Shown in pieces: positions 1,182 through 14,720 of a stretch of 14,869 nucleotides of DNA. Numbering within the stretch: position 1 is the stretch's first letter; each line of letters starts with the position of its first letter. The notes under the pieces were generated by a model. It saw only the letters and a program-made list of their open reading frames with translations. It had not been told where the DNA came from and did no database searches. The position numbers and the translations under genes were made by a program. The DNA is from Selaginella moellendorffii (taxonomy: Eukaryota; Plantae; Lycopodiophyta). The stretch lies in the NCBI RefSeq assembly GCF_000143415.4, contig NW_003314537.1:1-14869 (forward strand). The letters run 5' to 3'.

Positions 1182-1617
1182 CGCGCTGCCGTTTTGCTTG
1201 TTTCTTCTCTTTTTTTTTTCTCCGGTACTAAGTAACTCCTCCCGTTCCCAGAGATTTTTCTCTTCCACGTGTGCGTCAGCGTCGGTAACGATGATTTCTA
1301 TTCAATCAATCTGATCTGATCGGGCGAAGAGCGAGGAAGGAACCTTCTGCTTCTTTCCCCCCAATCCATCGCTGTTGCCTTGCCTTGAAGTTATCAAAGA
1401 CCCGCGAGATTTTCTTTGCCTGCTCTAATGTAACCGCTGGTTCCCTCTGCCTTGATTTCTTCTCTTCTCTGCCTGGGCCTGTGCCTGCCTGCCTCGTATT
1501 TACAGCCGAAAGTTTTTTAGGTGGGAGTAAAGTCTCTCCTTCCTGGCTTTGACTTTGCTTCTCCTCCTCCTCACTCGCTTGATTGTTTGTGCGCGTACTT
1601 ATCTTTTCCTCTGCTGC

Positions 1618-3147
1618 CTAAGATCCGCTGCCGCAGATGAAGTTATACACCACCAGCGTGACGCCGAACTGTGGACTCGTTCGCAGCACACGCGCGAGGC
1701 TCCCTTTGAACAGCGCTCTTGGACCCTCTGCCACCCATACGCTCTTGAGGCAAGCCAGCGCGTTCTCGTGCGGGATCTGGCCGTCGGGAAGTTCCATCTA
1801 TAAGAAGAACATTTTGTTAGCGGGAAGATCGGGTATGGCGAAGTTTGTGGACTTACTTGTAGCCTCGTCTTGACGACGTCCATTGGAGTGGAGAGAACTG
1901 TCGCAGGAATGGCTGCTAGGAATCCGTCGGCAAATCCTTGGTCCGGGTAGAGCTGGCAGAGGATAGCGTAGCACGCGAAGAAAATGCCCGAGCTTGGGAT
2001 GTCTCTGGCCAGCGTCACCCCTGCGCCGTGGTACAGCCCCCGGAAGCCCAGCTCCTTGATTACTTCGCAGAAACCACGCTTGTTGGACGTTGTCTGGGTT
2101 TGGAGCCGGACTTTGACGATCTCCATCGGGTTTGTGAAGACCACCTGAGAGAAGCCTCCACCGCTCCCGGCAATGAGCTCGAGAAACCACAGTCCAGTGC
2201 CAGGCATTACGTGCTCCAGCAGCTCTAGCAGGAGCTCGTTTACTGTCAGCTTTACAGCCTGAGGCAAGTAGGAAAAAAAAGAGAATGTTTAGACTTTGGA
2301 ATAGAAAAAGCTTATGCTATACCTTCTCCGGAGCTATTCCAACGAGCTGGGGCAGCAATCCGCTGTACAGTGACCCCATTCCCTCGTCAGCTACGAGTTT
2401 TCTAAAGCAATCTATCTCGTTCTTGTATTTACATTCTTCGTCATTGTTCTGGAAAACACAAAGTTAAAAGTTAGAAATGAAAACGAAGGATTTTTTTTTT
2501 TTTTCTCTTACCTGTGCTTGCATGCGAGTTTTTATCGTGTCGAGCGGATACACCAAGGCCGCTCCAATCGCCCCGGCAACACCGCCGCCACCAAAGTGCT
2601 GCAATATCCTCGCAAGAAGCCTGGAGCTGGATGACACCACCACCGGGTTTATGACCGGCACCGCCTTGGGCCTCGCCACTGCTTGTACAACCTTGTTCGT
2701 CACTGGGACGATCGAGACTTCCGGAGCATTGAGCGCTACTGATACCTCCAAAGAACGATCCAAATTCCTCGCTCCATCCAACACTAAATCCCGTGCTACC
2801 TCTGCTTGCTTGGCTGGAGACACCCGGTCGATCTCCAGCGCCGAGGGAGACGAACTAGGCAAGGAGAGCGAGAAAACCACTGCGGCTGTCACCACTCCCG
2901 GCTTCCAATCCATCATCCACAATTCCTCGCGACTTCCTTCACCGACGTCTCGACGCTCTACGTGAAAATTCCTCATCCCCTGTTGTTGCTGGCTATCTAG
3001 ACATACCTCTCGACCTTCTACGTGAAAATTTCTCCTCCGCAGCCTTGGAAGCTTGGATTTTAGCTCTGGACCAAGAAATGCCCTCGATCTTGGCGCTCGG
3101 ACAGGAAGCTGTTGCATCGGCCGAGTATCGCAGCACAAGCACTCCAT
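1618..3147 (-). CDS. Mitochondrial carrier family (SLC25) protein of aspartate/glutamate (AGC1/citrin/aralar) or glutamate-carrier type, about 447 aa; exons 3147-2512, 2448-2323, 2258-1857, 1797-1618
   Basis: Three Px[DE]xx[KR]x[KR] motifs ([33 protein letters not shown]). Manual splicing at three phase-0 GT-AG introns (63, 64, 59 nt) gives one continuous frame containing [44 protein letters not shown] and [15 protein letters not shown], ending at TAG 1620-1618. The start ATG is the least certain part. Confidence 0.92.
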
Positions 3148-3333
3148 CGCACCGATCAGGAAATCCACAGAGATCTTCGCCCTGGCCCTATCTGTAAGCC
3201 AATGCTTTGCAAAATGCCTACCACGCGAACGCCAAGAGCACGGGAGCTCCCAAATGCGCCACAAGAACAGTAGATTCGCCGCCAAGTGATCCACACACCC
3301 GTGACCGCCGTGACCGACTTCGCTCGCTCGCTA

Positions 3334-3342
3334 AAACCCTAA
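3334..3342 (+). promoter_or_regulatory. Telo-box AAACCCTAA in the divergent intergenic region between the carrier and AWPM-19
   Basis: Exact motif about 190 bp upstream of the carrier ATG; function not demonstrable from sequence. Confidence 0.35.
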
Positions 3343-3768
3343 TCCAAAGCAACGGAAATATCTGTCCTAAAGCAACGAATATCCATCCATTGCCGGACAC
3401 GAGATGCTTCCTTTCGGAGAGAGCGACCGAAGCAGCGTGCTACAAAACGACTCGTGGATTTGGGGAGTTTTGGATTGGTCCAAACAGAGCCAGCTAGCTT
3501 TCGTGTGATAAATGTGGGGAGTGTTCTTCCTTCCTCTGGATTTCTCGTCGTGTTCTTCGTCGCCGCTCGCAAAGATCTGTGGTTGCTTCGGCCAGGCGTC
3601 GTCGATCGTGATCCGACTGGCTTACGTTCTCGACGCGGTGATCTGCTGCTGCTTCTGCTGCTTCCTCTGCGAGGCCCGGTTGGACCACCCCAAGTCTTCT
3701 TAACATCTGCATTGGCTTGCTCATAAGCTCTTAGATCATCCAAAGTTCTCTCGGAGGAACTCGAGGAG

Positions 3769-4428
3769 ATGGTTCGCCAGGACCAAATCGCGAGAGCGCT
3801 CTCACTCTTTTCCCTCCTCGCCCTCACCATCTTCTACGTGATCACCATCGCGCTCGCGAGCTGGGCGCTCAACCGCGCGTTCAAGGAGTCCACGCCCGGC
3901 TCGCCGGTACTAGGATCGACCCATGGTAAAACTTGTGATCGCGTTGACAAAAGTTGACTTTCGTTGTCTTTTACATACAGGGAATGCGGCGACTCCATTC
4001 CTTGCGTTGACCACGCTGATCTCCGGGGTCGTCGGAATGGCGGCGGTGATACTCGGGCTCCAACACGTGGCATCGTGGAAGGCCAAGACGCTAATCGCCG
4101 CCAACGCAGCCACCATTATCGCCTGGGCTCTCTCGCTACTGGCTATGGGGTAAGATACCCGGTATTACTATTACCATCACCATTACCATCTTGTTTTACA
4201 GGCTTGCCTGCCGCGAGGTTGGGCTTGGAGGGCGGAGGGACGGTAACCTGGTAAGAAGCTTGTGGTAATGGTCATGGTAACTTTTGGGCATTTTTACAGC
4301 GGAGCTTGGAGGGGTTTGTGATATTCCTGCCCTGGGTCCTGCTCGTACAAATGGTGACGTGGCAGGCGGCCATGGTTGTCCAGCGAGTGGAGCACGCACC
4401 CCCGACGACCCCACGAATGACTGTGTGA
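3769..4428 (+). CDS. AWPM-19-like (PM19) ABA-induced membrane protein, about 167 aa; exons 3769-3925, 3981-4149, 4202-4250, 4300-4428
   Basis: Spliced product has YVITIALASWALN, GNAATPFL, ISGVVGMAA, GLQHVASW, IAWALSLLAMGLACREV and RSLEGFVIFL, matching the AWPM-19 pattern. GT-AG introns of 55, 52 and 49 nt preserve frame; four hydrophobic segments. Confidence 0.9.
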
Positions 4429-4646
4429 TTGGATAATTTATTGGCAAGAAATTGTGTGTGATCTAATCCGGGAAATATGACATTCGATAATGCTGCTCCA
4501 CACATTTTTGTGTTCTCATGTGTCGTCCTATCACTCGATCGAGAGACGTTGCGGTCGATTGATCCAGTTCTTGGGAAATCGATAGCAAATCGATCGATAT
4601 AGCTCAAGTTTCCGGGAAACGATTGCTCTGGTTGGATTGAATCGCG

Positions 4647-5411
4647 ATGGAGAAGCAGAGGGAGCAAGATTTCCTGGACCGGCTGGTGATCTTCCTGGCC
4701 AAGCGCGATGGCATCGACAAGCTGGTCAAGACGCTCCAGTACACCGGTAAGCTCTCGCACTGGCATCTCTCGCGGCGGAGCAAGCGATCAAGCGTCCCCA
4801 ATCTCGCCACTCGCGCCAAGGCGCTCGAGGTCTCGTGCGGCCTCGCGCGCAAGGCCTTCCGCCTCGGCCGCTGGCTCTCGGGCCTCAACAATCTCCGCGC
4901 GCCAGCGCCCAATCTCCCCTTCCTCGCGCTCGCCATCCTCGCCAACGCCGGGGAGATGGTCTACTTCTTCTTCGACCACTTCACCTGGCTCTCGCGGATT
5001 GGCGTGCTCGATCCCAGCCTCGCCCCGCGCTTCTCCCTCGTCTCGGCATCCGGGGAGGCGTTCGGCTACGTCTTCTTCGTGATCGCCGACGCCATTCTCA
5101 TCGCGCAGGGCGTCCGGGAGGAGCGGAGGCTCGCGCTGGAGCTGCAGGCGATGGTGAGGAGCCGGGACACGAAGCTGGGCGATGAATCGAGCAAGCTGGG
5201 CGGGCAGATCCAGGCCAAGAGGGTTGCGATCGCGGCAATCCGGGTGAAGAGAGTGATGTCGGCCATGGCGATCGCTGCTAACGTCGCGGATTTCGTGATC
5301 GCGCTCGCGGACATCGAGCCCAATCCGTTTGTGACCCATGCCGTGACGCTGGGGATCAGTGGATTGGTCTCAGCGTGGGCGGGATGGTATCGAAACTGGC
5401 CATCGTCTTAG
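4647..5411 (+). CDS. PEX11B: Peroxisomal membrane protein PEX11B-type, intronless, 254 aa
   Basis: LVIFLAKRDGIDKLVKTLQY, GLARKAFRLG, ANAGEMVYFFFDHFTWLSRIG and C-terminal TLGISGLVSAWAGWYRNWPS are characteristic of plant PEX11b. Confidence 0.95.
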   Translation: MEKQREQDFLDRLVIFLAKRDGIDKLVKTLQYTGKLSHWHLSRRSKRSSVPNLATRAKALEVSCGLARKAFRLGRWLSGLNNLRAPAPNLPFLALAILANAGEMVYFFFDHFTWLSRIGVLDPSLAPRFSLVSASGEAFGYVFFVIADAILIAQGVREERRLALELQAMVRSRDTKLGDESSKLGGQIQAKRVAIAAIRVKRVMSAMAIAANVADFVIALADIEPNPFVTHAVTLGISGLVSAWAGWYRNWPSS

Positions 5412-5487: not shown

Positions 5488-5701
5488 TCCCACGCAGGAC
5501 AAACTGTGACCGTCCGATCATCAGTTTTAGGGTTCCTCCTCCTGTGGCATGGCGCAGCACTGCATGATGGCGATTGCTTGATCCCTGCGCTCCAAGAGCG
5601 CGGCGATGCAGCGCGGTGGGCTACACATCTTCCGCTGAGTGGGAATTCCTCTTCACTTGGATCTCTCTACCGGCATTTTAGATCCGAGGGTGGGCAGCAG
5701 C

Positions 5702-7141
5702 ATGGATTCGCCCAAGCGCGGCAGCAATCAGCACCAACAGCGCAAGCTCCCGCTCCTCCCGCTCGTCTTCCTGATCTTCTATGAGGTCTCCGGCGGCCCC
5801 TTCGGCGTGGAGGACGCGGTGGGCGCGGGTGGGGCGCTGCTCACGCTGCTGGGATTCATCGTCATGCCCTTTCTATGGAGCATCCCCGAGGCGGTGATCA
5901 CCGCGGAGCTCGCCACGGCCTTTCCCGACAACGGCGGCTACGTGCTGTGGATCCAGGCGGCCTTCGGCCCCTTCTGGGGATTCCAGGAGGGATGGTGGAA
6001 GTGGCTGTCGGGAGTGATCGACAACGCGCTCTATCCGGTGATGTTCCTCGACTACCTCAAGTGGGCGATCCCCAGCGTCGCCGGCGGCGTCGTGCGTTTG
6101 ATCTCGCTGCTGGTCATCACAGCCGCGCTCACCATCGTCAACTATCGCGGGCTCACGATCGTGGGCTACACCGCGGTGGCGCTGGGGATCTTCTCGCTGC
6201 TGCCGTTCGTGGTGCTCTTCTTCCTCGCGATCCCATCGCTGGAGCCGGCGCGCTGGCTGGAGGTGGATCTCCGCGACACCAACTGGACGCTCTACCTCAA
6301 CACGCTCTTCTGGAATCTAAACTACTGGGACTCGGTGAGTACGCTGGTGGGCGAGGTGGATCGGCCGCACGAGACGGTGCCGCGGGCGCTAGCGGCGGCG
6401 CTGGTCCTGGTGGTGGCGTCGTATCTCCTGCCGCTCCTGGCGGGCACCGGGGCGGCGCCGCCGGGCGACCGCAAGCTCTGGGCCGACGGCTACTTCGCGC
6501 ACATCGCGCTCAAGATCGGCGGCGGCTGGCTCAAGTGGTGGGTGGAGCTGGCGGCGCTGCTGTCCAACGCCGGGATGTTCGAGGCGGAGATGAGTAGCGA
6601 CTCTTTCCAGCTGCTCGGGATGGCGGAGAGGGGCATCTTGCCCGCGGCGTTTGCGCGGAGGTCGAGGTATGGGACGCCGGTGCTGGGGATCTTGTTCTCG
6701 GCCACCGGGGTCATCCTCCTCTCGTGGCTCAACTTCCAGGAGATCATCGAGATCCTAAACTTCCTCTACTGCTGCGGGATGCTGCTCGAGTTTGCGGCGT
6801 TCGTGTGGCTGCGGATCAAGCAGCCGAATCTCGTCCGGCCTTACAAAGTTCCGCTGGGGACGATCGGGGTGACGGTGATGTGCCTGGTGCCGTCGGTGCT
6901 GCTGGTGGTGGTGATGTGCATCGCGTCGGCCAAGACGGTGGTGCTCAGCGTGGTGTTCTCGCTGGTGGGATTTGCGGTGTACCCGGCGATCCAGCTCGCC
7001 AAAAAAAAAAGCTGGCTAAGTTTCATTGACGCGCCGGATCCCATCGCGCTCAACAAGGAGAAGATCCCGGCGCTGGCGGAGGAGCGCATTGTGCACGCGC
7101 GGGAAGCTGGGGATGAACAGACCCAGCTCTTGTGCTCATAG
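5702..7141 (+). CDS. Polyamine uptake transporter (PUT/LAT, RMV1-like; APC superfamily), about 479 aa. Possible alternative start at 5606 via a 66-nt intron 5616-5681 (MQRDPRVGSS-M)
   Basis: LPLVFLIFYEVSGGPFGVED, WSIPEAVITAELAT, GFQEGWWKWLSGVIDNALYPV, FWNLNYWDS and GMFEAEMSSDSFQLLGMAERG are PUT/LAT hallmark motifs; about 12 hydrophobic segments. Confidence 0.95.
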   Translation: MDSPKRGSNQHQQRKLPLLPLVFLIFYEVSGGPFGVEDAVGAGGALLTLLGFIVMPFLWSIPEAVITAELATAFPDNGGYVLWIQAAFGPFWGFQEGWWKWLSGVIDNALYPVMFLDYLKWAIPSVAGGVVRLISLLVITAALTIVNYRGLTIVGYTAVALGIFSLLPFVVLFFLAIPSLEPARWLEVDLRDTNWTLYLNTLFWNLNYWDSVSTLVGEVDRPHETVPRALAAALVLVVASYLLPLLAGTGAAPPGDRKLWADGYFAHIALKIGGGWLKWWVELAALLSNAGMFEAEMSSDSFQLLGMAERGILPAAFARRSRYGTPVLGILFSATGVILLSWLNFQEIIEILNFLYCCGMLLEFAAFVWLRIKQPNLVRPYKVPLGTIGVTVMCLVPSVLLVVVMCIASAKTVVLSVVFSLVGFAVYPAIQLAKKKSWLSFIDAPDPIALNKEKIPALAEERIVHAREAGDEQTQLLCS

Positions 7142-7299: not shown

Positions 7300-8165
7300 A
7301 TGAAAAGCTTGTTGCTCCTGTTGCTATGGACGTTCTTGTGTGTGCCCATTAATGAAAAGGGTGGCCAGGGTGTACTCAACCTCGAGCAGGTCCTGGCCAT
7401 GGAGTTCCACATCCGCTACTTCCTCATCACTCAGCTCCAACCTGATAGATTCTATTATCCACGGACATGGTCCACAACACTCCGAATTGATCATGACCTT
7501 TTTGCATTGTAAGGCTGATGCTCTTTAGCCAAGTATCAGATGAAAGTTGCAGCCTTGCACCCTCCCCAATGCGGGTCCAAATCTTAGAGAAGCTTTCAAT
7601 GCCCTAGTTGATCGAGTCTCAGCACTAGCTAGTATGCATGGCTATAATCATGTAATGGCCACCTTAGGACTTGTAAGCATTGACTACCCGACTCTCTTCA
7701 CAGCTCTGCCACCAGGTCAGCTTGCAATGCACAGATATCCTTTTTGAGGCTGTTTCCAACACAACACCAACTCTCCAAAATGACTGTTATGCCTTTAACT
7801 CTACAATGGTGAGTTGAGAGTGAGGAGTGTTTGGATCCGACCTCTACAGTGGCTCTCATCTTGTATCTCTCGAGCTTGTTTTGAAATATGACTGTAACTT
7901 GGTAATATTAGCAAGGGGATGGAAGGAGCTTTGGTCGAGTTCCACACCTGGAAAAGGAGTTAAATGTGTACTCACTCAAATGGATGGGAACTTGGTGCTC
8001 ATAGGAGGAGATGGAGGTGGTATCTTTACATCAAACATTTACTACCAACCACGGATTTTTGGAATCAATTGGGTGCTTGAAAATAGTAGATCCATCATGA
8101 TTTACCATGCTTTGGGGCCATGCTTCTCTTGTGGCAACAGCTATAATTGTCTCACCTGGTCTTAA
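7300..8165 (+). pseudogene. Disrupted paralog of the 9121-10047 secreted lectin-domain gene
   Basis: Collinear with the intact copy (IRYFLITQLQPDRFY vs IRYFLINEIQPDRFY; GSDLYSGS; ARGWKELWSSST). It is broken into ORF pieces by a 1-nt deletion near 7500 (TAA 7510-7512), a deletion near 7570, a frameshift near 7740 and loss of the PNGFY segment. Confidence 0.88.
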
Positions 8166-8850: not shown

Positions 8851-9120
8851 ATTTGCGAGAATGATTAAATAAACTTGCCATCACCACACTAAGTCCACTG
8901 ACAAACAAAAAAAATGCTCCAAAATAATTTCTTATATTTTATTGAGTATATTGACCTCGAACACCCGGTTGTTGACATTCCCATTCATAGTCAACCCATT
9001 GTTCTTAATAGTCAAAGTTCGAAATGACCATTAGTCAATGCAGCCAAGAATCCCAATGATTAAGAGCCCCTGTTGGAAATGCAATATTTGAAAACTGAAG
9101 CTCAACTTGAGGCAAGAAAC

Positions 9121-10047
9121 ATGTTGGTGCTGCTCTTGTTTCTGTGGACAATCTTTTGTCCTTCTAGCTGCTTATGTGTGCGCTTCGATGTCGCAACTGG
9201 CTTGGGCATACTCAACCTCCACCAGGTCATTACCATGCAGGTCCGTATTCGCTACTTCCTCATCAATGAGATCCAACCGGACAGATTTTATGGTCCACAG
9301 ACATGGTCAACAACACTCCAAATCGATCACAACGTCTACTGTATTGTAGGTCTGACACTCTTCAGCCAAGCAGCAGATGGAAGTTGCAACCTTGCACCCT
9401 CCCCAATGATGACTCAGGGGTCCCATCTCAGAGCAGCTTTCAATTTCCTAGTTGATCAAGCTGGAGGACTAGCTCAAATGTATGGCTATAGCCACATAAT
9501 AGCCACCTCAGGACGTGTAAGCATTAACTACTTAACTATCTACACAACTCAGCCGCAAGGTCATCTTGCATCGCATAGTCAACCTTTTGAGGATGTTTAC
9601 AATCTTTCCCAACTCAATTCAACTCTCAACTCTACTAGAGATCTGTATGACCAAAATGACTGCTATCCCTTTCGCTCTGGAATGATGAGCGGAGAGCGAG
9701 GAGAGCTTGGATCCGACCTCTACAGTGGCTCTCGTCTTGTGTCTCCCAACGGCTTCTACGAGCTTGTTTTGGAATACAACTGTAACTTGGTGCTATTAGC
9801 GAGGGGATGGAAGGAGCTTTGGTCGAGTTCTACGGCTGGAAAAGGAGTTGGATGTGTACTCACTCTCCAAAGGGATGGGAACTTGGTGCTCGTAGGAGGA
9901 GATGGCAGAGGTATCTTTGCATCAAACATTTACTGCCAACCACAGCCTCACTGCATACTTGGAACCAATTTGGTGCTTGAAAATAGTGGATCTATCTCCA
10001 TCTATCGTGCCTCTGAGCCCATGCTTCTCTTGTGGCGACGGCCATAA
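9121..10047 (+). CDS. Secreted two-domain protein, 308 aa: signal peptide, unassigned ~110-aa domain (possibly KP4-like), N-glycosylated linker, C-terminal bulb-type (GNA/B-) lectin domain
   Basis: Intronless ORF with hydrophobic N-terminus MLVLLLFLWTIFC. DLYSGSRLVSPNGFYELVLEYNCNLVL, LWSSST and CVLTLQRDGNLVL are B-lectin motifs. Sequons NLS, NST, NST at residues 161-172. A paralog lies at 7300. Confidence 0.88.
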   Translation: MLVLLLFLWTIFCPSSCLCVRFDVATGLGILNLHQVITMQVRIRYFLINEIQPDRFYGPQTWSTTLQIDHNVYCIVGLTLFSQAADGSCNLAPSPMMTQGSHLRAAFNFLVDQAGGLAQMYGYSHIIATSGRVSINYLTIYTTQPQGHLASHSQPFEDVYNLSQLNSTLNSTRDLYDQNDCYPFRSGMMSGERGELGSDLYSGSRLVSPNGFYELVLEYNCNLVLLARGWKELWSSSTAGKGVGCVLTLQRDGNLVLVGGDGRGIFASNIYCQPQPHCILGTNLVLENSGSISIYRASEPMLLLWRRP

Positions 10048-10628: not shown

Positions 10629-11724
10629 TCAGACTGTTGCTTGCTGGTTGCAGCATCCAGCGCGGTGCTCGATACGCGGCCAAAGATCTTTCACAGTTGG
10701 CCGTGGCTTTCCAGTACGCGAGTAGAAACCGTACAAGATCAGTTGAATCACCGCCAGGCAAGCCCCAACAAGATTTGGCACCTAGAGAGTGACCAGATTT
10801 TCAATGAATTGAGCTCCAAATAAGAAACGAGTCGAGCAATGCCTACCACAATGTAGTAGTCGTGTGGTTGTCCCAGGAATCCATACGCAGTCCAGGTAGC
10901 TCCATTGAAAAGCCCGGCCACGAGCGGCAGGAGGGGCATGTATTGGACGCTCTTGGTAGAAATCACTGTTCTCTGGACGAAACAAATCGAAGTAAAGTTG
11001 ATGGAACTCGATCAAAGTCCAGACTTACCATGATGGAAAGAGGAGAAGCATACATTGCAATGGTGACTACAGCGCAGCAAATCCCAGCAAACTTCTGGCG
11101 TGTGTGATGGTCCTTGGAAGCCATGAAAACAGCCAAAAAAATCCCCAAGTAAACCGTCAAGACGATGCTGATCATCCCGGCTACTCTGGCCTGTAAATAA
11201 TAACAAGCAAAGTAACTACGATAGAAAACTTTCACATGAACTCTTCCCTACCTTCTCGATTCTCTTGGAGGCGTAGAAGAGGAAGATCCCCAGATAGACG
11301 CTCTCGATCACACAGCCGATTGTATTGATCGTGATCACGAGGACGCTGTTGGAAGTAACGAAGGGAAGGCCGTAGAGCACCCAGAGCAAGCAGTTGAAGA
11401 GCGTCGCGACGTAAGGGGCTCCCGAGAAGTCGCCCGTGGTGTGGTTCTTGACGATACTCCGGAAGGTTGGCCTGTCAAGCACACGTCAGAGCCCGTCAAA
11501 GCCTCGTCAATGCCAGCCATAGCCAAAACCCCAGGGGCCAGGGATCAAGAAAGCGAGGATCTTACGCAGGGGACAGGAAGAGGCCGAAAGCGATCACATT
11601 TCCTGCGGGGAGCGCTCTCCACAATCAGGATCGGCGAGATCGAGAGAGAAAGAGGAAATCGGGAGAAAGAAGAAAGATTACCGATGATCCCCATGACAGT
11701 GCGAATTGCGCCGGCGGGCGCCAT
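10629..11724 (-). CDS. SWEET: SWEET sugar transporter (MtN3/saliva), clade II-like, about 246 aa; exons 11724-11682, 11602-11566, 11471-11252, 11190-11029, 10972-10847, 10781-10629
   Basis: Spliced product [30 protein letters not shown]...FSGAPYVATLFNCLLWVLYGLP...LVITIN...MYASPLSIMRTVISTKSVQYMP...YIVVPNLVG...QLILY. Canonical 6-exon SWEET layout with GT-AG introns of 79, 94, 61, 56 and 65 nt. Confidence 0.95.
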
Positions 11725-12914: not shown

Positions 12915-14720
12915 TTAATTAGAAGTAATAATGATATATTCATTGCTAATAGTCAAGTTTGGAAAATGTTTTATTAGATCAAATGTTATTAATTTAAATG
13001 GACAGGAAATTGCAATTGACTCTAACCATTATTTCATAACATGAAAGGGAGTAATATGAATTTAGCACCAAATATATTTATACATATATTGGATAACTTT
13101 ATATTACATTTTCAGCTAATAAAAAAACTTGTGCAACTTTTCAATCATACTATGATGTCCCATATGTCTGCGTAAAATAAATGAATCATGGTAAGTATAG
13201 AGAAAGCATGGAACAAAAATTGAAAAGCACCACCAGCCATAAATGATCATTAAGATTCATCTCTACAAAATAAAGAAAATCATTCTCAAGATGATATTAA
13301 GAATGTAAATACTAAATGGCAAATTATTAACAAATGATACAAGATTTTCAAATCTATCACGCTATAGCAACCACTGACCCTATAGAAACCTTGTCCAAAA
13401 AATCTATAAATGTTGAAACAAACTTGTCAAAAACATAAAAAGAAAGTGAAAGAGGAAGAGGAACTTAAGAAAGAACATTAACATTAATTATAAAACTCTT
13501 TAAATGATTAACAGAATCAAAATTATATATTTGATTTAAAACCAACTAAACAGTACAACCAACTAAATTATTCCACTTTAATAATAAAATAAATGCAATA
13601 TGATCACCTTTTAGTAATGTCCAAGAATTATATAGATATGCATAAAGTTTCTAAATACTCTAAATTGTTGCTAAACACTCATTCTCTATCATGGAATAAT
13701 TCACCTTTATTGATTGTAATGTACAGTTGATATATGTAATGGGATGGCATTGATTAAGCATTGGGCTCTTTTATATTAACACACCTCTAAAACTGATATC
13801 AAAAGTATTCACATGCAAAATAAAAATCAAGTGTAGTTAGGATATGCTAAAATTAGAAGAATTGTTAACAACTCTTTGAGATCTATAAATGCCCACTCAC
13901 AATCTATAGATCAAAGGAAAGACAATGTTAATAATTTCAATAATGCTCGCAATGGTGCAATATAATTAGAAAGATAGTTAATGAAACGACTGAGATATTG
14001 CAAATTGCCTAAGTAGCACTACACATCATTCACATATTTTGGAGTAGGGAAATTGAGAATATCCATAAATTTTTCAGAATCACATGAGAAATACAGTACT
14101 AAGATAAATGGTGTTTTTAGACTCAAACATGCACTTTGATCTCTTCAACTTTAAACTAATTTCTCGTAGCTGATCCAATATTTTACAAATATCACAAATG
14201 TATTCCTCCTATGTCCTCTCCAAGTGGATTAAGACATCATTAATGAAATTAATAGTCATCTCTAACATATTGCAAAGAACCTTGTTTATCATTTGTTAGA
14301 AAGTTGCTGAAGCATTGTTTAAACCAAATGGCATCACCAAGAACTTATATAAACTAAATAGTGTACGAAAAACAATCTGGGGAAAATCTTTTTTAGCTAT
14401 TAGCTCTTGTTGACACATTAAAGCAAAATTTAACATAGTGAATCAATAATGTTTTTATAGACAATCTAGAAGATTAACAATGTGAGGAAGGGTACACATT
14501 CGAGATTATCACTTCATTTAACAAATAATAATTGATATAAAAACAAATACTCTTATTACACTTCGTCGTAAGATAAAGTTCACATGCTTAAAAACTCTGT
14601 AACTTTTGAATAACACTTTTTTTTAACATTTCTTTGATATTTATATATAAAACCTTGATCTCTTTTGATGACCGACAATGAACAAAAACCTTCATTAGAT
14701 AAACATTTCTAGTTAGAATA
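12915..14720 (-). mobile_element. Degenerate Ty3/gypsy LTR-retrotransposon pol relic (RT, RNase H, start of integrase); probably continues beyond the window end
   Basis: Minus-strand translation gives IKEMLKKSVIQ, INYYLLNEV...VYP, IVFRTLFSLYKFLVMPFGLNNASATF*Q (VMPFGLNNA at 14337-14311), FIND in place of YxDD (14247-14236), LKLKRSKCMF, AFIDLKELLT...LAYPNY, NYSMIENECLA, then integrase zinc-finger relic YHDS...HMGH (about 13190-13155) and PFKLITFDLI. The RT-RH-INT order indicates gypsy. Numerous stops. Confidence 0.9.

What the first reader, a model, noticed from the sequence alone, without database searches (positions are those of the whole stretch)
1618..3147. AGC1/citrin-type aspartate-glutamate carrier in a land plant
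Seen: [38 protein letters not shown] and [10 protein letters not shown] closely follow animal SLC25A12/13 and fungal Agc1 ([48 protein letters not shown]), including the PEK glutamate and the RD amino-acid contact point. Known: Arabidopsis is regarded as lacking an AGC orthologue, with UCP1/2 doing Asp/Glu exchange. Inference: an ancestral carrier retained in seed-free plants (or acquired horizontally) and absent from angiosperm models. An Asp in helix 5 (FADG, usually LLAG) and a very short H4-H5 loop are atypical.
Basis: partly seen in the sequence, partly recalled or inferred. Interest (0 to 1): 0.7.

Follow-up and report, generated by a model that had tools for sequence, protein, structure and literature searches.

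The report
Green-plant aspartate/glutamate-type carrier, lost in angiosperms
This Selaginella gene is a real, expressed member of the aspartate/glutamate carrier family, which reviews say plants lack; it belongs to a branch found from green algae to gymnosperms, and no flowering-plant copy turned up in the searches run here.

Summary
Window 3147..1618 (minus strand) holds a 4-exon gene. Assembled contigs from four public runs, taken as RNA because they lack the introns, show all three introns (63, 64 and 59 nt, GT..AG) removed exactly as modelled. The 447-aa product is identical to RefSeq XP_002994451.2 of Selaginella moellendorffii.

Its carrier domain is 45-49% identical to animal, fungal and dictyostelid aspartate/glutamate carriers (AGC). 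It keeps all three AGC substrate contact points (K..K, RD, R) and 12 of 15 AGC signature-triplet residues.

In ML trees it sits inside the AGC family (100/100), in a streptophyte clade (100/100) whose branching broadly follows the species tree. A chlorophyte (Bryopsis) sequence is sister to that clade (90/94). Descent is therefore vertical, not horizontal transfer.

Members were found in Klebsormidium, Zygnematophyceae, liverworts, mosses, ferns, Selaginella, Ginkgo and Taxus. Two searches found no angiosperm member, so "seed-free" is too narrow.

The clade has no EF-hands, ends right after H6 where AGCs run on, and has an 11-residue H4-H5 deletion. It also carries a conserved element in the N-terminal extension: basic residues, a hydrophobic stretch, then AxA.

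Asp/Glu transport and the protein's location are inferred, not shown. Databases already label it Aralar-like by similarity. The papers I could search do not describe it.

The parts
1618..3147 (-). Whole coding region, ATG to stop, of the AGC-family carrier gene. The product is 447 aa and equals XP_002994451.2.
   Evidence: identical to P0153; spliced contigs
2512..3147 (-). Coding exon 1 (212 codons): the N-terminal extension (residues 1-~174) plus the start of carrier repeat 1 (helix 1, [10 protein letters not shown])
2833..2898 (-). Hydrophobic element of the N-terminal extension (residues 84-105, [22 protein letters not shown]). It is the counterpart of the clade-wide element of basic residues, about 20 hydrophobic residues and AxA. 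The Selaginella copy has no basic residue directly before the hydrophobic stretch.
   Evidence: AlphaFold2 predicts a helix at 83-95 at low confidence
2449..2511 (-). Intron 1, 63 nt, GT..AG
   Evidence: skipped in contigs of 4 runs
2323..2448 (-). Coding exon 2 (42 codons): matrix loop 1 and the start of helix 2. It ends with PEK; K254 is the first contact-point-I lysine.
2259..2322 (-). Intron 2, 64 nt, GT..AG, lying between PEK and AVK inside helix 2
1857..2258 (-). Coding exon 3 (134 codons): the rest of helix 2 (K257), all of repeat 2 and helix 5. It includes contact point II (R339-D340, nt 2006-2001) and the shortened H4-H5 loop (YPDQGF).
1798..1856 (-). Intron 3, 59 nt, GT..AG. RefSeq isoform X1 retains it, which shifts the frame and removes helix 6.
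   Evidence: spliced in 4 runs, and small unspliced contigs in X1 and X3
1618..1797 (-). Coding exon 4 (59 codons plus stop): matrix loop 3 and helix 6, with contact point III (R427, nt 1683-1681). The protein ends 8 residues after the conserved helix-6 Tyr (Y439), so there is no C-terminal tail.
3148..3322 (-). 5' untranslated region. Contigs end at 3307-3322.
   Evidence: table 8
1400..1617 (-). 3' untranslated region. Contigs run on beyond 1400, so the true end was not determined.
   Evidence: table 8

Best explanation
The gene encodes a six-helix mitochondrial-carrier-family transporter. It belongs to the aspartate/glutamate carrier (AGC; SLC25A12/13/Agc1p) family, in a branch specific to the green lineage. 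That branch was inherited vertically, from chlorophyte and streptophyte algae through bryophytes, lycophytes, ferns and gymnosperms, and appears to have been lost in angiosperms.

It keeps the AGC substrate site: two Lys on helix 2, Arg-Asp on helix 4 and Arg on helix 6. It also keeps the three PX[DE]XX[KR] matrix-gate motifs. The most likely mechanism is therefore alternating-access transport of acidic amino acids (Asp, Glu and related compounds).

It has no EF-hands and ends right after helix 6, so it lacks the residues that follow helix 6 in animal AGCs. It cannot be Ca2+-regulated in the animal way. Instead it has a low-complexity N-terminal extension with a conserved signal-like element (basic residues, a hydrophobic stretch, AxA). 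This element probably directs sorting or anchoring.

Shown here: gene structure, splicing, family placement, conservation of the binding-site residues and taxonomic distribution. Inferred: substrate, transport mode and subcellular location.
For: Gene and transcript. The 4-exon model equals XP_002994451.2. All three introns are removed in contigs of 4 runs from 4 studies.

Fold. Pfam finds three Mito_carr repeats. AlphaFold2 gives pLDDT of about 90 over residues 175-447, with 6 transmembrane and 3 matrix helices.

Family. In the exhaustive HMMER search with exon 3, the best matches were clade members at about 53-72% identity, and the matches below them were proteins of about 650-730 aa at about 40-46%. 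In the word search, every named hit below the clade is an AGC, Aralar, SLC25A13 or agc1, at E 1e-72 to 1e-63. A profile search gave the same picture and included D. melanogaster Aralar.

Trees (IQ-TREE, LG+C20). AGC family 100/100 against outgroups, streptophyte clade 100/100. With Bryopsis added, the green clade gets 90/94 and the streptophytes 100/99. Order inside the clade is Klebsormidium, then Zygnematophyceae, then land plants.

Binding site. Contact point I K254/K257, contact point II R339-D340 and contact point III R427 are all conserved with AGCs (definitions from PMC6769469). Triplets 22 GQA and 85 KSF are identical to AGC. Triplets 77 QTR, 84 ESQ and 88 KFT each differ at one residue (AGC values from PMC7408384).

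No EF-hand or any other Pfam domain was found in nine N-terminal extensions, even at E<=1.
Against: No transport or localisation data exist. All three signature differences (C->T at position 77, F->S at 84, Y->F at 88) lie in repeat 2, on helix 4 next to contact point II, and could shift specificity. The helix-2 cytoplasmic-gate Arg of AGCs (VNDxxR) is Leu or Met here (VNExxL). The H4-H5 loop is 11 residues shorter, so kinetics or transport mode may differ. Identity to AGCs (45-49%) is no higher than the 46% reported between GC and AGC. I could not obtain GC (SLC25A18/22) or angiosperm carrier sequences by reference, so they are not in the trees. The backbone inside the AGC family is unresolved (UFBoot 40-75).
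Confidence: 0.7

Rival explanations
1. It is an AGC-derived carrier that has changed function. It sits in the plastid (thylakoid or envelope) rather than the mitochondrial inner membrane, and/or carries a different amino-acid-like substrate. The conserved N-terminal element would act as a bipartite, Tat- or Sec-type transit signal.
For: Most clade members examined, plus Bryopsis and P0041, carry 35-200 residues (often Ser/Thr-rich, with few acidic residues), followed by basic residues, about 20 hydrophobic residues and an AxA-type end. Examples are Ginkgo ..LNRRLLAAAVSISFVSSFPATHALA|E, Taxus ..KRRLLAAAVG..THAQA and Bryopsis ..NRRALIGGSTVIAVG. Three binding-site-proximal residues on helix 4 differ from AGC. 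Plant MCF members are known to reside in plastids as well (abstract of PMC7565455).
Against: The twin Arg is not universal (KR, HR, QR-N, GR-N, and in Selaginella no basic residue directly before the hydrophobic stretch). The same layout also fits a mitochondrial bipartite (stop-transfer, IMP-cleaved) presequence or a plain membrane anchor. No targeting predictor or proteome was available. All three contact points are unchanged.
Confidence: 0.2
2. It works like the animal glutamate carriers (GC, SLC25A18/22), as a short glutamate/H+ symporter, rather than as an Asp/Glu exchanger.
For: It lacks the regulatory domain, as GC does. The repeat-2 residue of triplet 77 is Thr, as in GC (NTR), not Cys as in AGC. 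Identity to AGC is similar to that between GC and AGC.
Against: GC lacks the contact-point-III Arg, whereas this protein has R427. Triplet 80 is G-R-R as in AGC, not L-R-V. Triplet 84 repeat 3 is Q and triplet 88 repeat 3 is T, the AGC residues, not the GC residues L and A. GC is described as confined to multicellular animals. No GC appeared among the best 150 or 120 hits.
Confidence: 0.05
3. It is a horizontally acquired or contaminating fungal, animal or protist AGC gene, not an ancestral plant gene.
For: Reviews say plants lack AGC. The window is a small 14.9-kb scaffold.
Against: The gene has three short GT..AG introns and lies next to typical plant genes: AWPM-19, PEX11, an amino-acid permease and SWEET. 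A second copy differing by 5 amino acids lies on a 2.35-Mb Selaginella scaffold. Orthologues occur in all sampled streptophyte lineages except angiosperms, in broadly species-tree order, with a chlorophyte sister. The clade does not group with any fungal, animal or amoebozoan subclade.
Confidence: 0.02
4. It belongs to a carrier clade already characterised in angiosperms. RefSeq names isoform X1 'adenine nucleotide transporter BT1'; SAMC, BOU or BAC are other candidates.
For: The RefSeq name of isoform X1.
Against: Contact point II is RD, the amino-acid class, not the G[IVLM] of nucleotide carriers. No angiosperm protein scored above E 1e-63 in the single-protein search or above about 1e-96 in the profile search, while hundreds of AGCs did. 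Arabidopsis BAC2 is only 30-33% identical to AGCs.
Confidence: 0.02

Closest known systems
Animal aspartate/glutamate carriers AGC1/aralar (SLC25A12) and AGC2/citrin (SLC25A13), including Drosophila Aralar
   Same: The carrier domain is 45-47% identical. Contact points I (K..K), II (RD) and III (R) are the same. Triplets 22 (GQA) and 85 (KSF) are the same, and triplet 80 is G-R-R. The PX[DE]XX[KR] motifs are the same. Motifs such as PQLxGxAPEKAxKLTVN, SQVxFTNPxEIVKxRLQ and SPQFGxTL are shared. It lies in the same family in ML trees (100/100).
   Different: It has no N-terminal domain with eight EF-hands, and it ends right after helix 6, with none of the residues that follow helix 6 in AGCs. 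So there is no Ca2+ regulation of the animal type. The H4-H5 loop is 11 residues shorter. Helix-4 residues differ: T for C (77), S for F (84), F for Y (88). The helix-2 gate Arg is replaced by Leu or Met. The N-terminal extension contains a signal-like hydrophobic element.
Yeast and fungal Agc1p (YPR021c)
   Same: The carrier domain is about 46% identical to fungal agc1 proteins. The contact points are the same. Yeast Agc1p also has a long N-terminal extension without functional Ca2+-binding motifs (PMC6769469).
   Different: Agc1p is 57-58% identical to human AGCs, closer than this clade is. The fungal N-extension is unrelated in sequence. Many fungal agc1 proteins in the hit lists still carry EF-hand Pfam domains. 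The plant clade has the loop deletion and the helix-4 substitutions.
Chlorophyte AGC-like carriers (Bryopsis sp. BSKO_06926; unnamed P0041)
   Same: They are sister to the streptophyte clade (UFBoot 90 / SH-aLRT 94). They have no EF-hands. The N-terminal extension has RR followed by a hydrophobic segment.
   Different: They keep the canonical AGC features that streptophytes changed: a full-length H4-H5 loop, RDVPFS, and a basic residue at the helix-2 gate position (VNDAVRK in P0041, ANDFARS in Bryopsis). They are 52-58% identical to animal AGCs.
Arabidopsis AtUCP1/AtUCP2 (PUMP1/2), the carriers credited with Asp/Glu exchange in angiosperms
   Same: Both are mitochondrial carrier family proteins and handle acidic amino acids (proposed for the Selaginella protein, shown for AtUCP1/2).
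   Different: They belong to a different subfamily (the UCP/dicarboxylate cluster). Their contact point II is RN, not RD. Their exchange is electroneutral and they also carry dicarboxylates (PMC6769469, PMC7408384). They are not orthologous to this gene.
Animal glutamate carriers GC1/GC2 (SLC25A22/18)
   Same: They are short, have no regulatory domain and are about 46% identical to AGC. Triplet 77 repeat 2 is Thr in both.
   Different: GC lacks the contact-point-III Arg and has triplet 80 L-R-V. This protein has R427 and G-R-R. GC is restricted to animals.

Membership tests
Mitochondrial carrier family (SLC25, Pfam PF00153) | Three tandem repeats of about 100 residues, each with PX[DE]XX[KR], forming six transmembrane helices | tested here: met
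   Mito_carr matches every exon. The motifs are [16 protein letters not shown] and PMDVVKTR. AlphaFold2 gives 6 TM helices and 3 matrix helices at pLDDT of about 90.
AGC (SLC25A12/13/Agc1p) | Contact point II is R-D on helix 4 (the amino-acid class) | tested here: met
   R339-D340 aligns with the RD of animal, fungal and dictyostelid AGCs. Definition from PMC6769469.
AGC (SLC25A12/13/Agc1p) | Contact point I has two lysines on helix 2 (PEKAxK) | tested here: met
   K254 and K257 are invariant across the 32-sequence alignment.
AGC (SLC25A12/13/Agc1p) | Contact point III is an arginine on helix 6 (absent in GC) | tested here: met
   R427 in [10 protein letters not shown] aligns with RVFRSSPQFG.
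AGC (SLC25A12/13/Agc1p) | Characteristic symmetry triplets 22 GQA, 77 QCR, 84 EFQ, 85 KSF and 88 KYT (table in PMC7408384) | tested here: inconclusive
   The window has GQA, QTR, ESQ, KSF and KFT, which is 12 of 15 residues. All three differences are in repeat 2 (helix 4) and are clade-wide. I mapped the positions by hand from the alignment.
AGC (SLC25A12/13/Agc1p) | Groups with characterised AGCs in phylogeny, to the exclusion of other carriers | tested here: met
   The AGC family including the green clade gets 100/100 against five other-subfamily outgroups and against three. Caveat: GC and the Arabidopsis, human and yeast reference sets could not be included.
AGC (SLC25A12/13/Agc1p) | N-terminal EF-hand regulatory domain, plus the stretch after helix 6 (from my own knowledge of the published animal AGC N-domain structures, a helix that binds that domain) | tested here: not met
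   No EF-hand or other Pfam hit in nine N-extensions at E<=1. Precomputed Pfam for clade members lists PF00153 only. The protein ends 8 residues after the conserved helix-6 Tyr (Y439), whereas AGCs continue. This feature defines the animal subgroup, not the family: yeast Agc1p lacks Ca2+-binding motifs.
AGC (SLC25A12/13/Agc1p) | Catalyses aspartate/glutamate (and cysteinesulfinate) exchange | not testable with these tools
   Needs proteoliposome assays or yeast agc1 deletion complementation.
AGC (SLC25A12/13/Agc1p) | Located in the mitochondrial inner membrane | not testable with these tools
   No targeting predictor or proteome was available. The N-terminal element is ambiguous between mitochondrial bipartite and plastid or thylakoid signals.
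GC (SLC25A18/22) | No Arg at contact point III; triplets 80 LRV, 84 EFL and 88 KYA | tested here: not met
   The window has R427 and triplets 80 GRR, 84 ESQ and 88 KFT.
Adenine-nucleotide carriers (BT1; the RefSeq name of isoform X1) | Contact point II is G[IVLM] (the nucleotide class) | tested here: not met
   Contact point II is RD (classes).
Calcium-binding mitochondrial carriers (the RefSeq name of isoform X2) | EF-hand Ca2+-binding motifs | tested here: not met
   None detected.

The most novel reading that the evidence does not exclude
The green lineage replaced the EF-hand domain of the ancestral AGC with a bipartite, twin-arginine-type transit signal. It thereby moved an aspartate/glutamate-type carrier into the plastid (thylakoid or inner envelope), with its N-terminal extension on the lumenal or intermembrane side. 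This organellar acidic-amino-acid carrier persisted from chlorophytes to gymnosperms and was lost, or replaced by other carriers, in the angiosperm stem.
Probability: 0.2. Interest if true: 0.75.

Novelty: new variant of a known kind. Interest (0 to 1): 0.55.

Why it matters
Reviews of mitochondrial amino-acid carriers state that plants have no close AGC homologue, and they build the plant malate-aspartate shuttle and photorespiratory nitrogen picture around AtUCP1/2, BOU and the BACs (PMC6769469, PMC3355725, PMC7408384). That view rests on Arabidopsis.

The data here suggest that the AGC family was present in the ancestor of green plants and is still encoded in algae, bryophytes, lycophytes, ferns and gymnosperms. 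The absence would then be a later loss, at or before the origin of angiosperms.

This yields a concrete, testable candidate for Asp/Glu transport in Marchantia and Physcomitrium, both of which can be genetically manipulated. It also offers a natural experiment on what replaced the carrier in flowering plants. The structural variant itself is informative for how regulation and targeting evolved in AGCs: no Ca2+ domain, a shortened cytosolic loop and a signal-like N-terminal element.

Interest is tempered because automatic annotation already calls the protein Aralar-like and the biochemical function is only inferred.

Tried and rejected
(1) Searching the solved-structure sequences with exon 3 found only the GTP/GDP carrier, UCP1/2 and the ADP/ATP carrier. 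No AGC carrier-domain structure matched, so nothing discriminating came of it.

(2) Pfam on nine N-terminal extensions at E<=1 gave only sub-threshold noise. I rejected the idea that the extension is a degenerate EF-hand domain at sequence level. I did not run a profile-profile test.

(3) AlphaFold2 of the whole protein left the N-terminal 170 residues at pLDDT 30-50, so the extension remains structurally uninformative. I did not run a fold search, because the carrier fold would hit every SLC25 structure.

(4) I tried to obtain GC (SLC25A18/22), human and yeast reference AGCs and angiosperm carriers. None appeared in the capped hit lists, and I did not type sequences from memory. The trees therefore lack them.

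(5) Literature searches for the accessions and locus tags, for MCF plus Selaginella or Marchantia, and for Aralar plus bryophyte names found no description of this clade. The supplement of the MBE 2023 intron-position paper, which included Physcomitrium and Chlamydomonas, is not held.

(6) Earlier scan notes held only this same finding.

(7) Horizontal transfer or contamination was rejected; see the rival explanations.

(8) My guess that the ORFs at 7827-8165 and 9073-10047 are bulb-type lectins was not confirmed by Pfam at E<=0.001.

Procedure note. The spliced model was never typed into a search tool.
Full report
**What is in the sequence**

Window 3147..1618 on the minus strand carries a four-exon gene. 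The exons are 3147-2512, 2448-2323, 2258-1857 and 1797-1618. They are separated by introns of 63, 64 and 59 nt with GT..AG ends.

The joined translation is 447 aa. A local script showed it to be identical to database protein P0153 = XP_002994451.2. RefSeq names that protein 'calcium-binding mitochondrial carrier protein isoform X2' of Selaginella moellendorffii and places it on a contig of exactly 14,869 bp. The window is therefore a small S. moellendorffii scaffold. A second copy differing at 5 residues lies on a 2.35-Mb scaffold and is probably the other haplotype.

Searches used exon references and then P0153.

**Expression and splicing**

Contigs from four public runs (four studies, two organism labels) were laid on window 1400-3500. 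Each skips exactly 1798-1856, 2259-2322 and 2449-2511, which read CT..AC on the plus strand. The contigs cover about 1400 to 3307-3322. The run records do not say whether the libraries are RNA, but contigs that lack the introns must derive from RNA. The gene is therefore transcribed and spliced as modelled.

Two runs also have short contigs that run through intron 3. This matches RefSeq isoform X1 (P0151/P0001), which retains that intron, shifts frame and loses helix 6.

**The observation**

Pfam finds Mito_carr in every exon and nothing else. AlphaFold2, run with a 32-sequence alignment, gives a confident six-helix carrier over residues about 175-447 (pLDDT about 90). The N-terminal 170 residues are unconfident, with pLDDT of 30-50.

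**Relatives**

An exhaustive HMMER search with exon 3 against 1.84 billion representatives found two tiers. The best matches were its own family, at about 53-72% identity among the closest. Below them came proteins of about 650-730 aa at about 40-46% identity.

Named members of the own family are all streptophytes:
- Klebsormidium nitens
- Mesotaenium
- seven Closterium proteins
- liverworts: Marchantia polymorpha, M. paleacea, Riccia and Calypogeia
- mosses: Physcomitrium (two proteins), Ceratodon and Sphagnum
- ferns: Adiantum and Ceratopteris
- Selaginella
- two gymnosperms: Ginkgo (Gb_40754) and Taxus chinensis

Every named hit below that family is a bona fide AGC. These include dictyostelid EF-hand carriers, animal Aralar1, SLC25A12 and SLC25A13 (with D. 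melanogaster Aralar among them) and fungal agc1.

No angiosperm protein appears, although NCBI nr and UniRef are among the sources. This holds for the single-protein search (cut at E about 6e-63) and the clade-profile search (cut at about 2e-96). Both searches score only the 8000 candidates that share the most words. An orthologue at about 60% identity would share more words than the AGCs that were scored.

**Phylogeny**

Three analyses agree: FastTree on 215 carrier domains, a quick IQ-TREE and a careful IQ-TREE on 92 rows with LG+C20 PMSF.
- The AGC family is separated from five other-subfamily outgroups by a long branch with 100/100 support.
- The streptophyte sequences form one clade with 100/100 support.
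- Inside that clade Klebsormidium branches first, then the Zygnematophyceae, then land plants, broadly as in the species tree.
- The backbone among the AGC subclades (a short protist group, an amoebozoan-type group, animals, fungi and the green clade) is unresolved, with UFBoot of 40-75.

An unnamed relative, P0041, led to a chlorophyte protein from Bryopsis sp.. With Bryopsis added, Bryopsis and P0041 are sister to the streptophytes (SH-aLRT 97 in the quick tree; UFBoot 90 / SH-aLRT 94 in the careful tree).

This pattern indicates vertical descent within Viridiplantae, not horizontal transfer. The short plant-type introns and the neighbouring genes point the same way. Those neighbours are AWPM-19, PEX11, an amino-acid permease and SWEET.

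Left out of the trees: GC (SLC25A18/22), human and yeast reference AGCs and all angiosperm carriers. None could be obtained by reference.

**Family membership at residue level**

Monné et al. 2019 (PMC6769469) define the AGC contact points as two lysines on helix 2, RD on helix 4 and Arg on helix 6. GCs lack that Arg. The Selaginella protein has K254 and K257, R339-D340 and R427, each aligned with the AGC residues.

The subfamily triplets tabulated in PMC7408384 compare as follows.

| Triplet | AGC | This protein |
|---|---|---|
| 22 | GQA | GQA |
| 77 | QCR | QTR |
| 84 | EFQ | ESQ |
| 85 | KSF | KSF |
| 88 | KYT | KFT |

Triplet 80 is G-R-R here; GC has L-R-V. So 12 of 15 residues match. All three differences lie in repeat 2 (helix 4), beside contact point II, and are shared across the clade.

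**Clade-specific features**
- No EF-hand or any other Pfam domain occurs in the N-terminal extension.
- The protein ends a few residues after helix 6. Animal AGCs run on past that point. From my own knowledge of the published AGC N-domain structures, that stretch forms a helix that binds the N-domain.
- The H4-H5 loop is 11 residues shorter (YPDQxF).
- The helix-2 gate motif is VNExx[LM] instead of VNDxxR.
- Helix 3 carries a GGGGG run.

**The N-terminal extension**

Its length varies from about 170 to 430 residues and its sequence is poorly conserved. Most members nevertheless contain one recognisable element: one or two basic residues, about 20 hydrophobic residues and an Ala-x-Ala-type end, often followed by Glu. 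Examples:
- Ginkgo: LNRRLLAAAVSISFVSSFPATHALA-E
- Taxus: KRRLLAAAVGISLISSFPSTHAQA
- Ceratodon: KRRAALAALAVAGYVSIL..SSAS
- Adiantum: RKRGALALAMVCLGVSFSCGQPALA-E
- Selaginella: [22 protein letters not shown], with no basic residue directly before the hydrophobic stretch

Bryopsis (NRRALIGGSTVIAVG) and P0041 (NRRKALEALGIATIAATSAVPAAAHA) have it too. The element therefore predates the streptophyte-specific changes.

The layout is that of a bipartite sorting signal. It fits a thylakoid Tat/Sec-type lumen-targeting peptide. It also fits a mitochondrial stop-transfer presequence cleaved by inner-membrane peptidase, or an uncleaved anchor. I could not discriminate between these, and the location of the protein remains open.

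**How it most likely works**

It is an alternating-access SLC25 carrier with an AGC-type binding site. The most probable substrates are therefore aspartate, glutamate and related acidic amino acids. There is no Ca2+ control of the animal type. I put about 0.85 on membership of the AGC orthologous family and about 0.55-0.6 on Asp/Glu as the physiological substrates.

The helix-4 substitutions, the changed helix-2 gate residue and the shortened loop mean that specificity or mode (exchange versus uniport, electrogenic or not) may differ from AGC1/2.

**Novelty**

Automatic pipelines already label these proteins by similarity: RefSeq uses 'Aralar2' or 'calcium-binding mitochondrial carrier', and KEGG-based JGI names use 'SLC25A12/13'. 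One isoform is inconsistently named BT1, and the 'calcium-binding' label is unsupported.

The reviews I could read say that no close AGC homologue exists in plants. Searches for the accessions, or for MCF studies in Selaginella, Marchantia or Physcomitrium, found no description of this clade.

I classify it as a new variant of a known kind. It is a modest but real correction to the textbook picture, with clear experiments available in Marchantia and Physcomitrium.

Noticed in passing
window 1798-1856 (intron 3); proteins P0151 and P0001: RefSeq isoform X1 (473 and 469 aa on the two haplotypes) retains intron 3. It reads on in a shifted frame and lacks helix 6. The two copies carry unrelated names ('BT1' and 'Aralar2'). 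Short contigs through intron 3 exist in runs X1 and X3 beside the spliced form, so some retention or pre-mRNA is real. The product would not be a complete carrier.
   Followed up: partly
window 3030-3005 and 2970-2945 (minus strand): There is a near-duplicate 26-nt segment 60 nt apart inside exon 1 (aattttcacgtagaaggtcgagaggt and aattttcacgtagagcgtcgagacgt). It encodes [11 protein letters not shown] and [11 protein letters not shown], a small in-frame duplication in the poorly conserved N-terminal extension.
   Followed up: no
window 3769-4430 (+), 4647-5411 (+), 5639-7141 (+), about 10963-11482 (-): The neighbouring genes are an AWPM-19-like membrane protein (spliced), PEX11 (peroxisome biogenesis factor 11), an intronless amino-acid permease (AA_permease_2) and a SWEET/MtN3 sugar transporter exon. 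They are ordinary plant genes, which argues against contamination.
   Followed up: partly
window 7827-8165 and 9073-10047 (+): Two ORFs share a repeated stretch (SDLYSGS.LVS...ELVL.YNCNLV.LARGWKELWSSST.GKGV.CVLT..DGNLVL.GGDG.GIF.SNIY). It looked to me like a bulb-type lectin, but Pfam gave no hit at E<=0.001. They may be a local duplicate pair of an unannotated family.
   Followed up: partly
window 13001-14500: G+C drops to 27-30% over the last part profiled (13001-14500), against 47-67% over most of the rest. No long ORFs were listed there.
   Followed up: no
proteins P0015, P0412, P0414, P0415 (Closterium spp.): Four Closterium gene models of 990-1100 aa join the AGC-like carrier to an additional Pfam PF13383 domain, while other Closterium models (780-811 aa) lack it. 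This is either a real fusion or merged neighbouring genes.
   Followed up: no
protein P0017 (979 aa, source unknown): One protein carries two complete AGC-type carrier domains in tandem after an Asn/Lys-rich N-terminal region.
   Followed up: no
window 2322/2323 (the exon 2 / intron 2 boundary): Intron 2 splits helix 2 between the two contact-point-I lysines (PEK|AVK). Monné et al. 2023 (PMC10027655) describe a frequent conserved intron position at the start of H2 in amino-acid and carboxylate carriers. I did not check whether this is the same position as in animal AGC genes.
   Followed up: no
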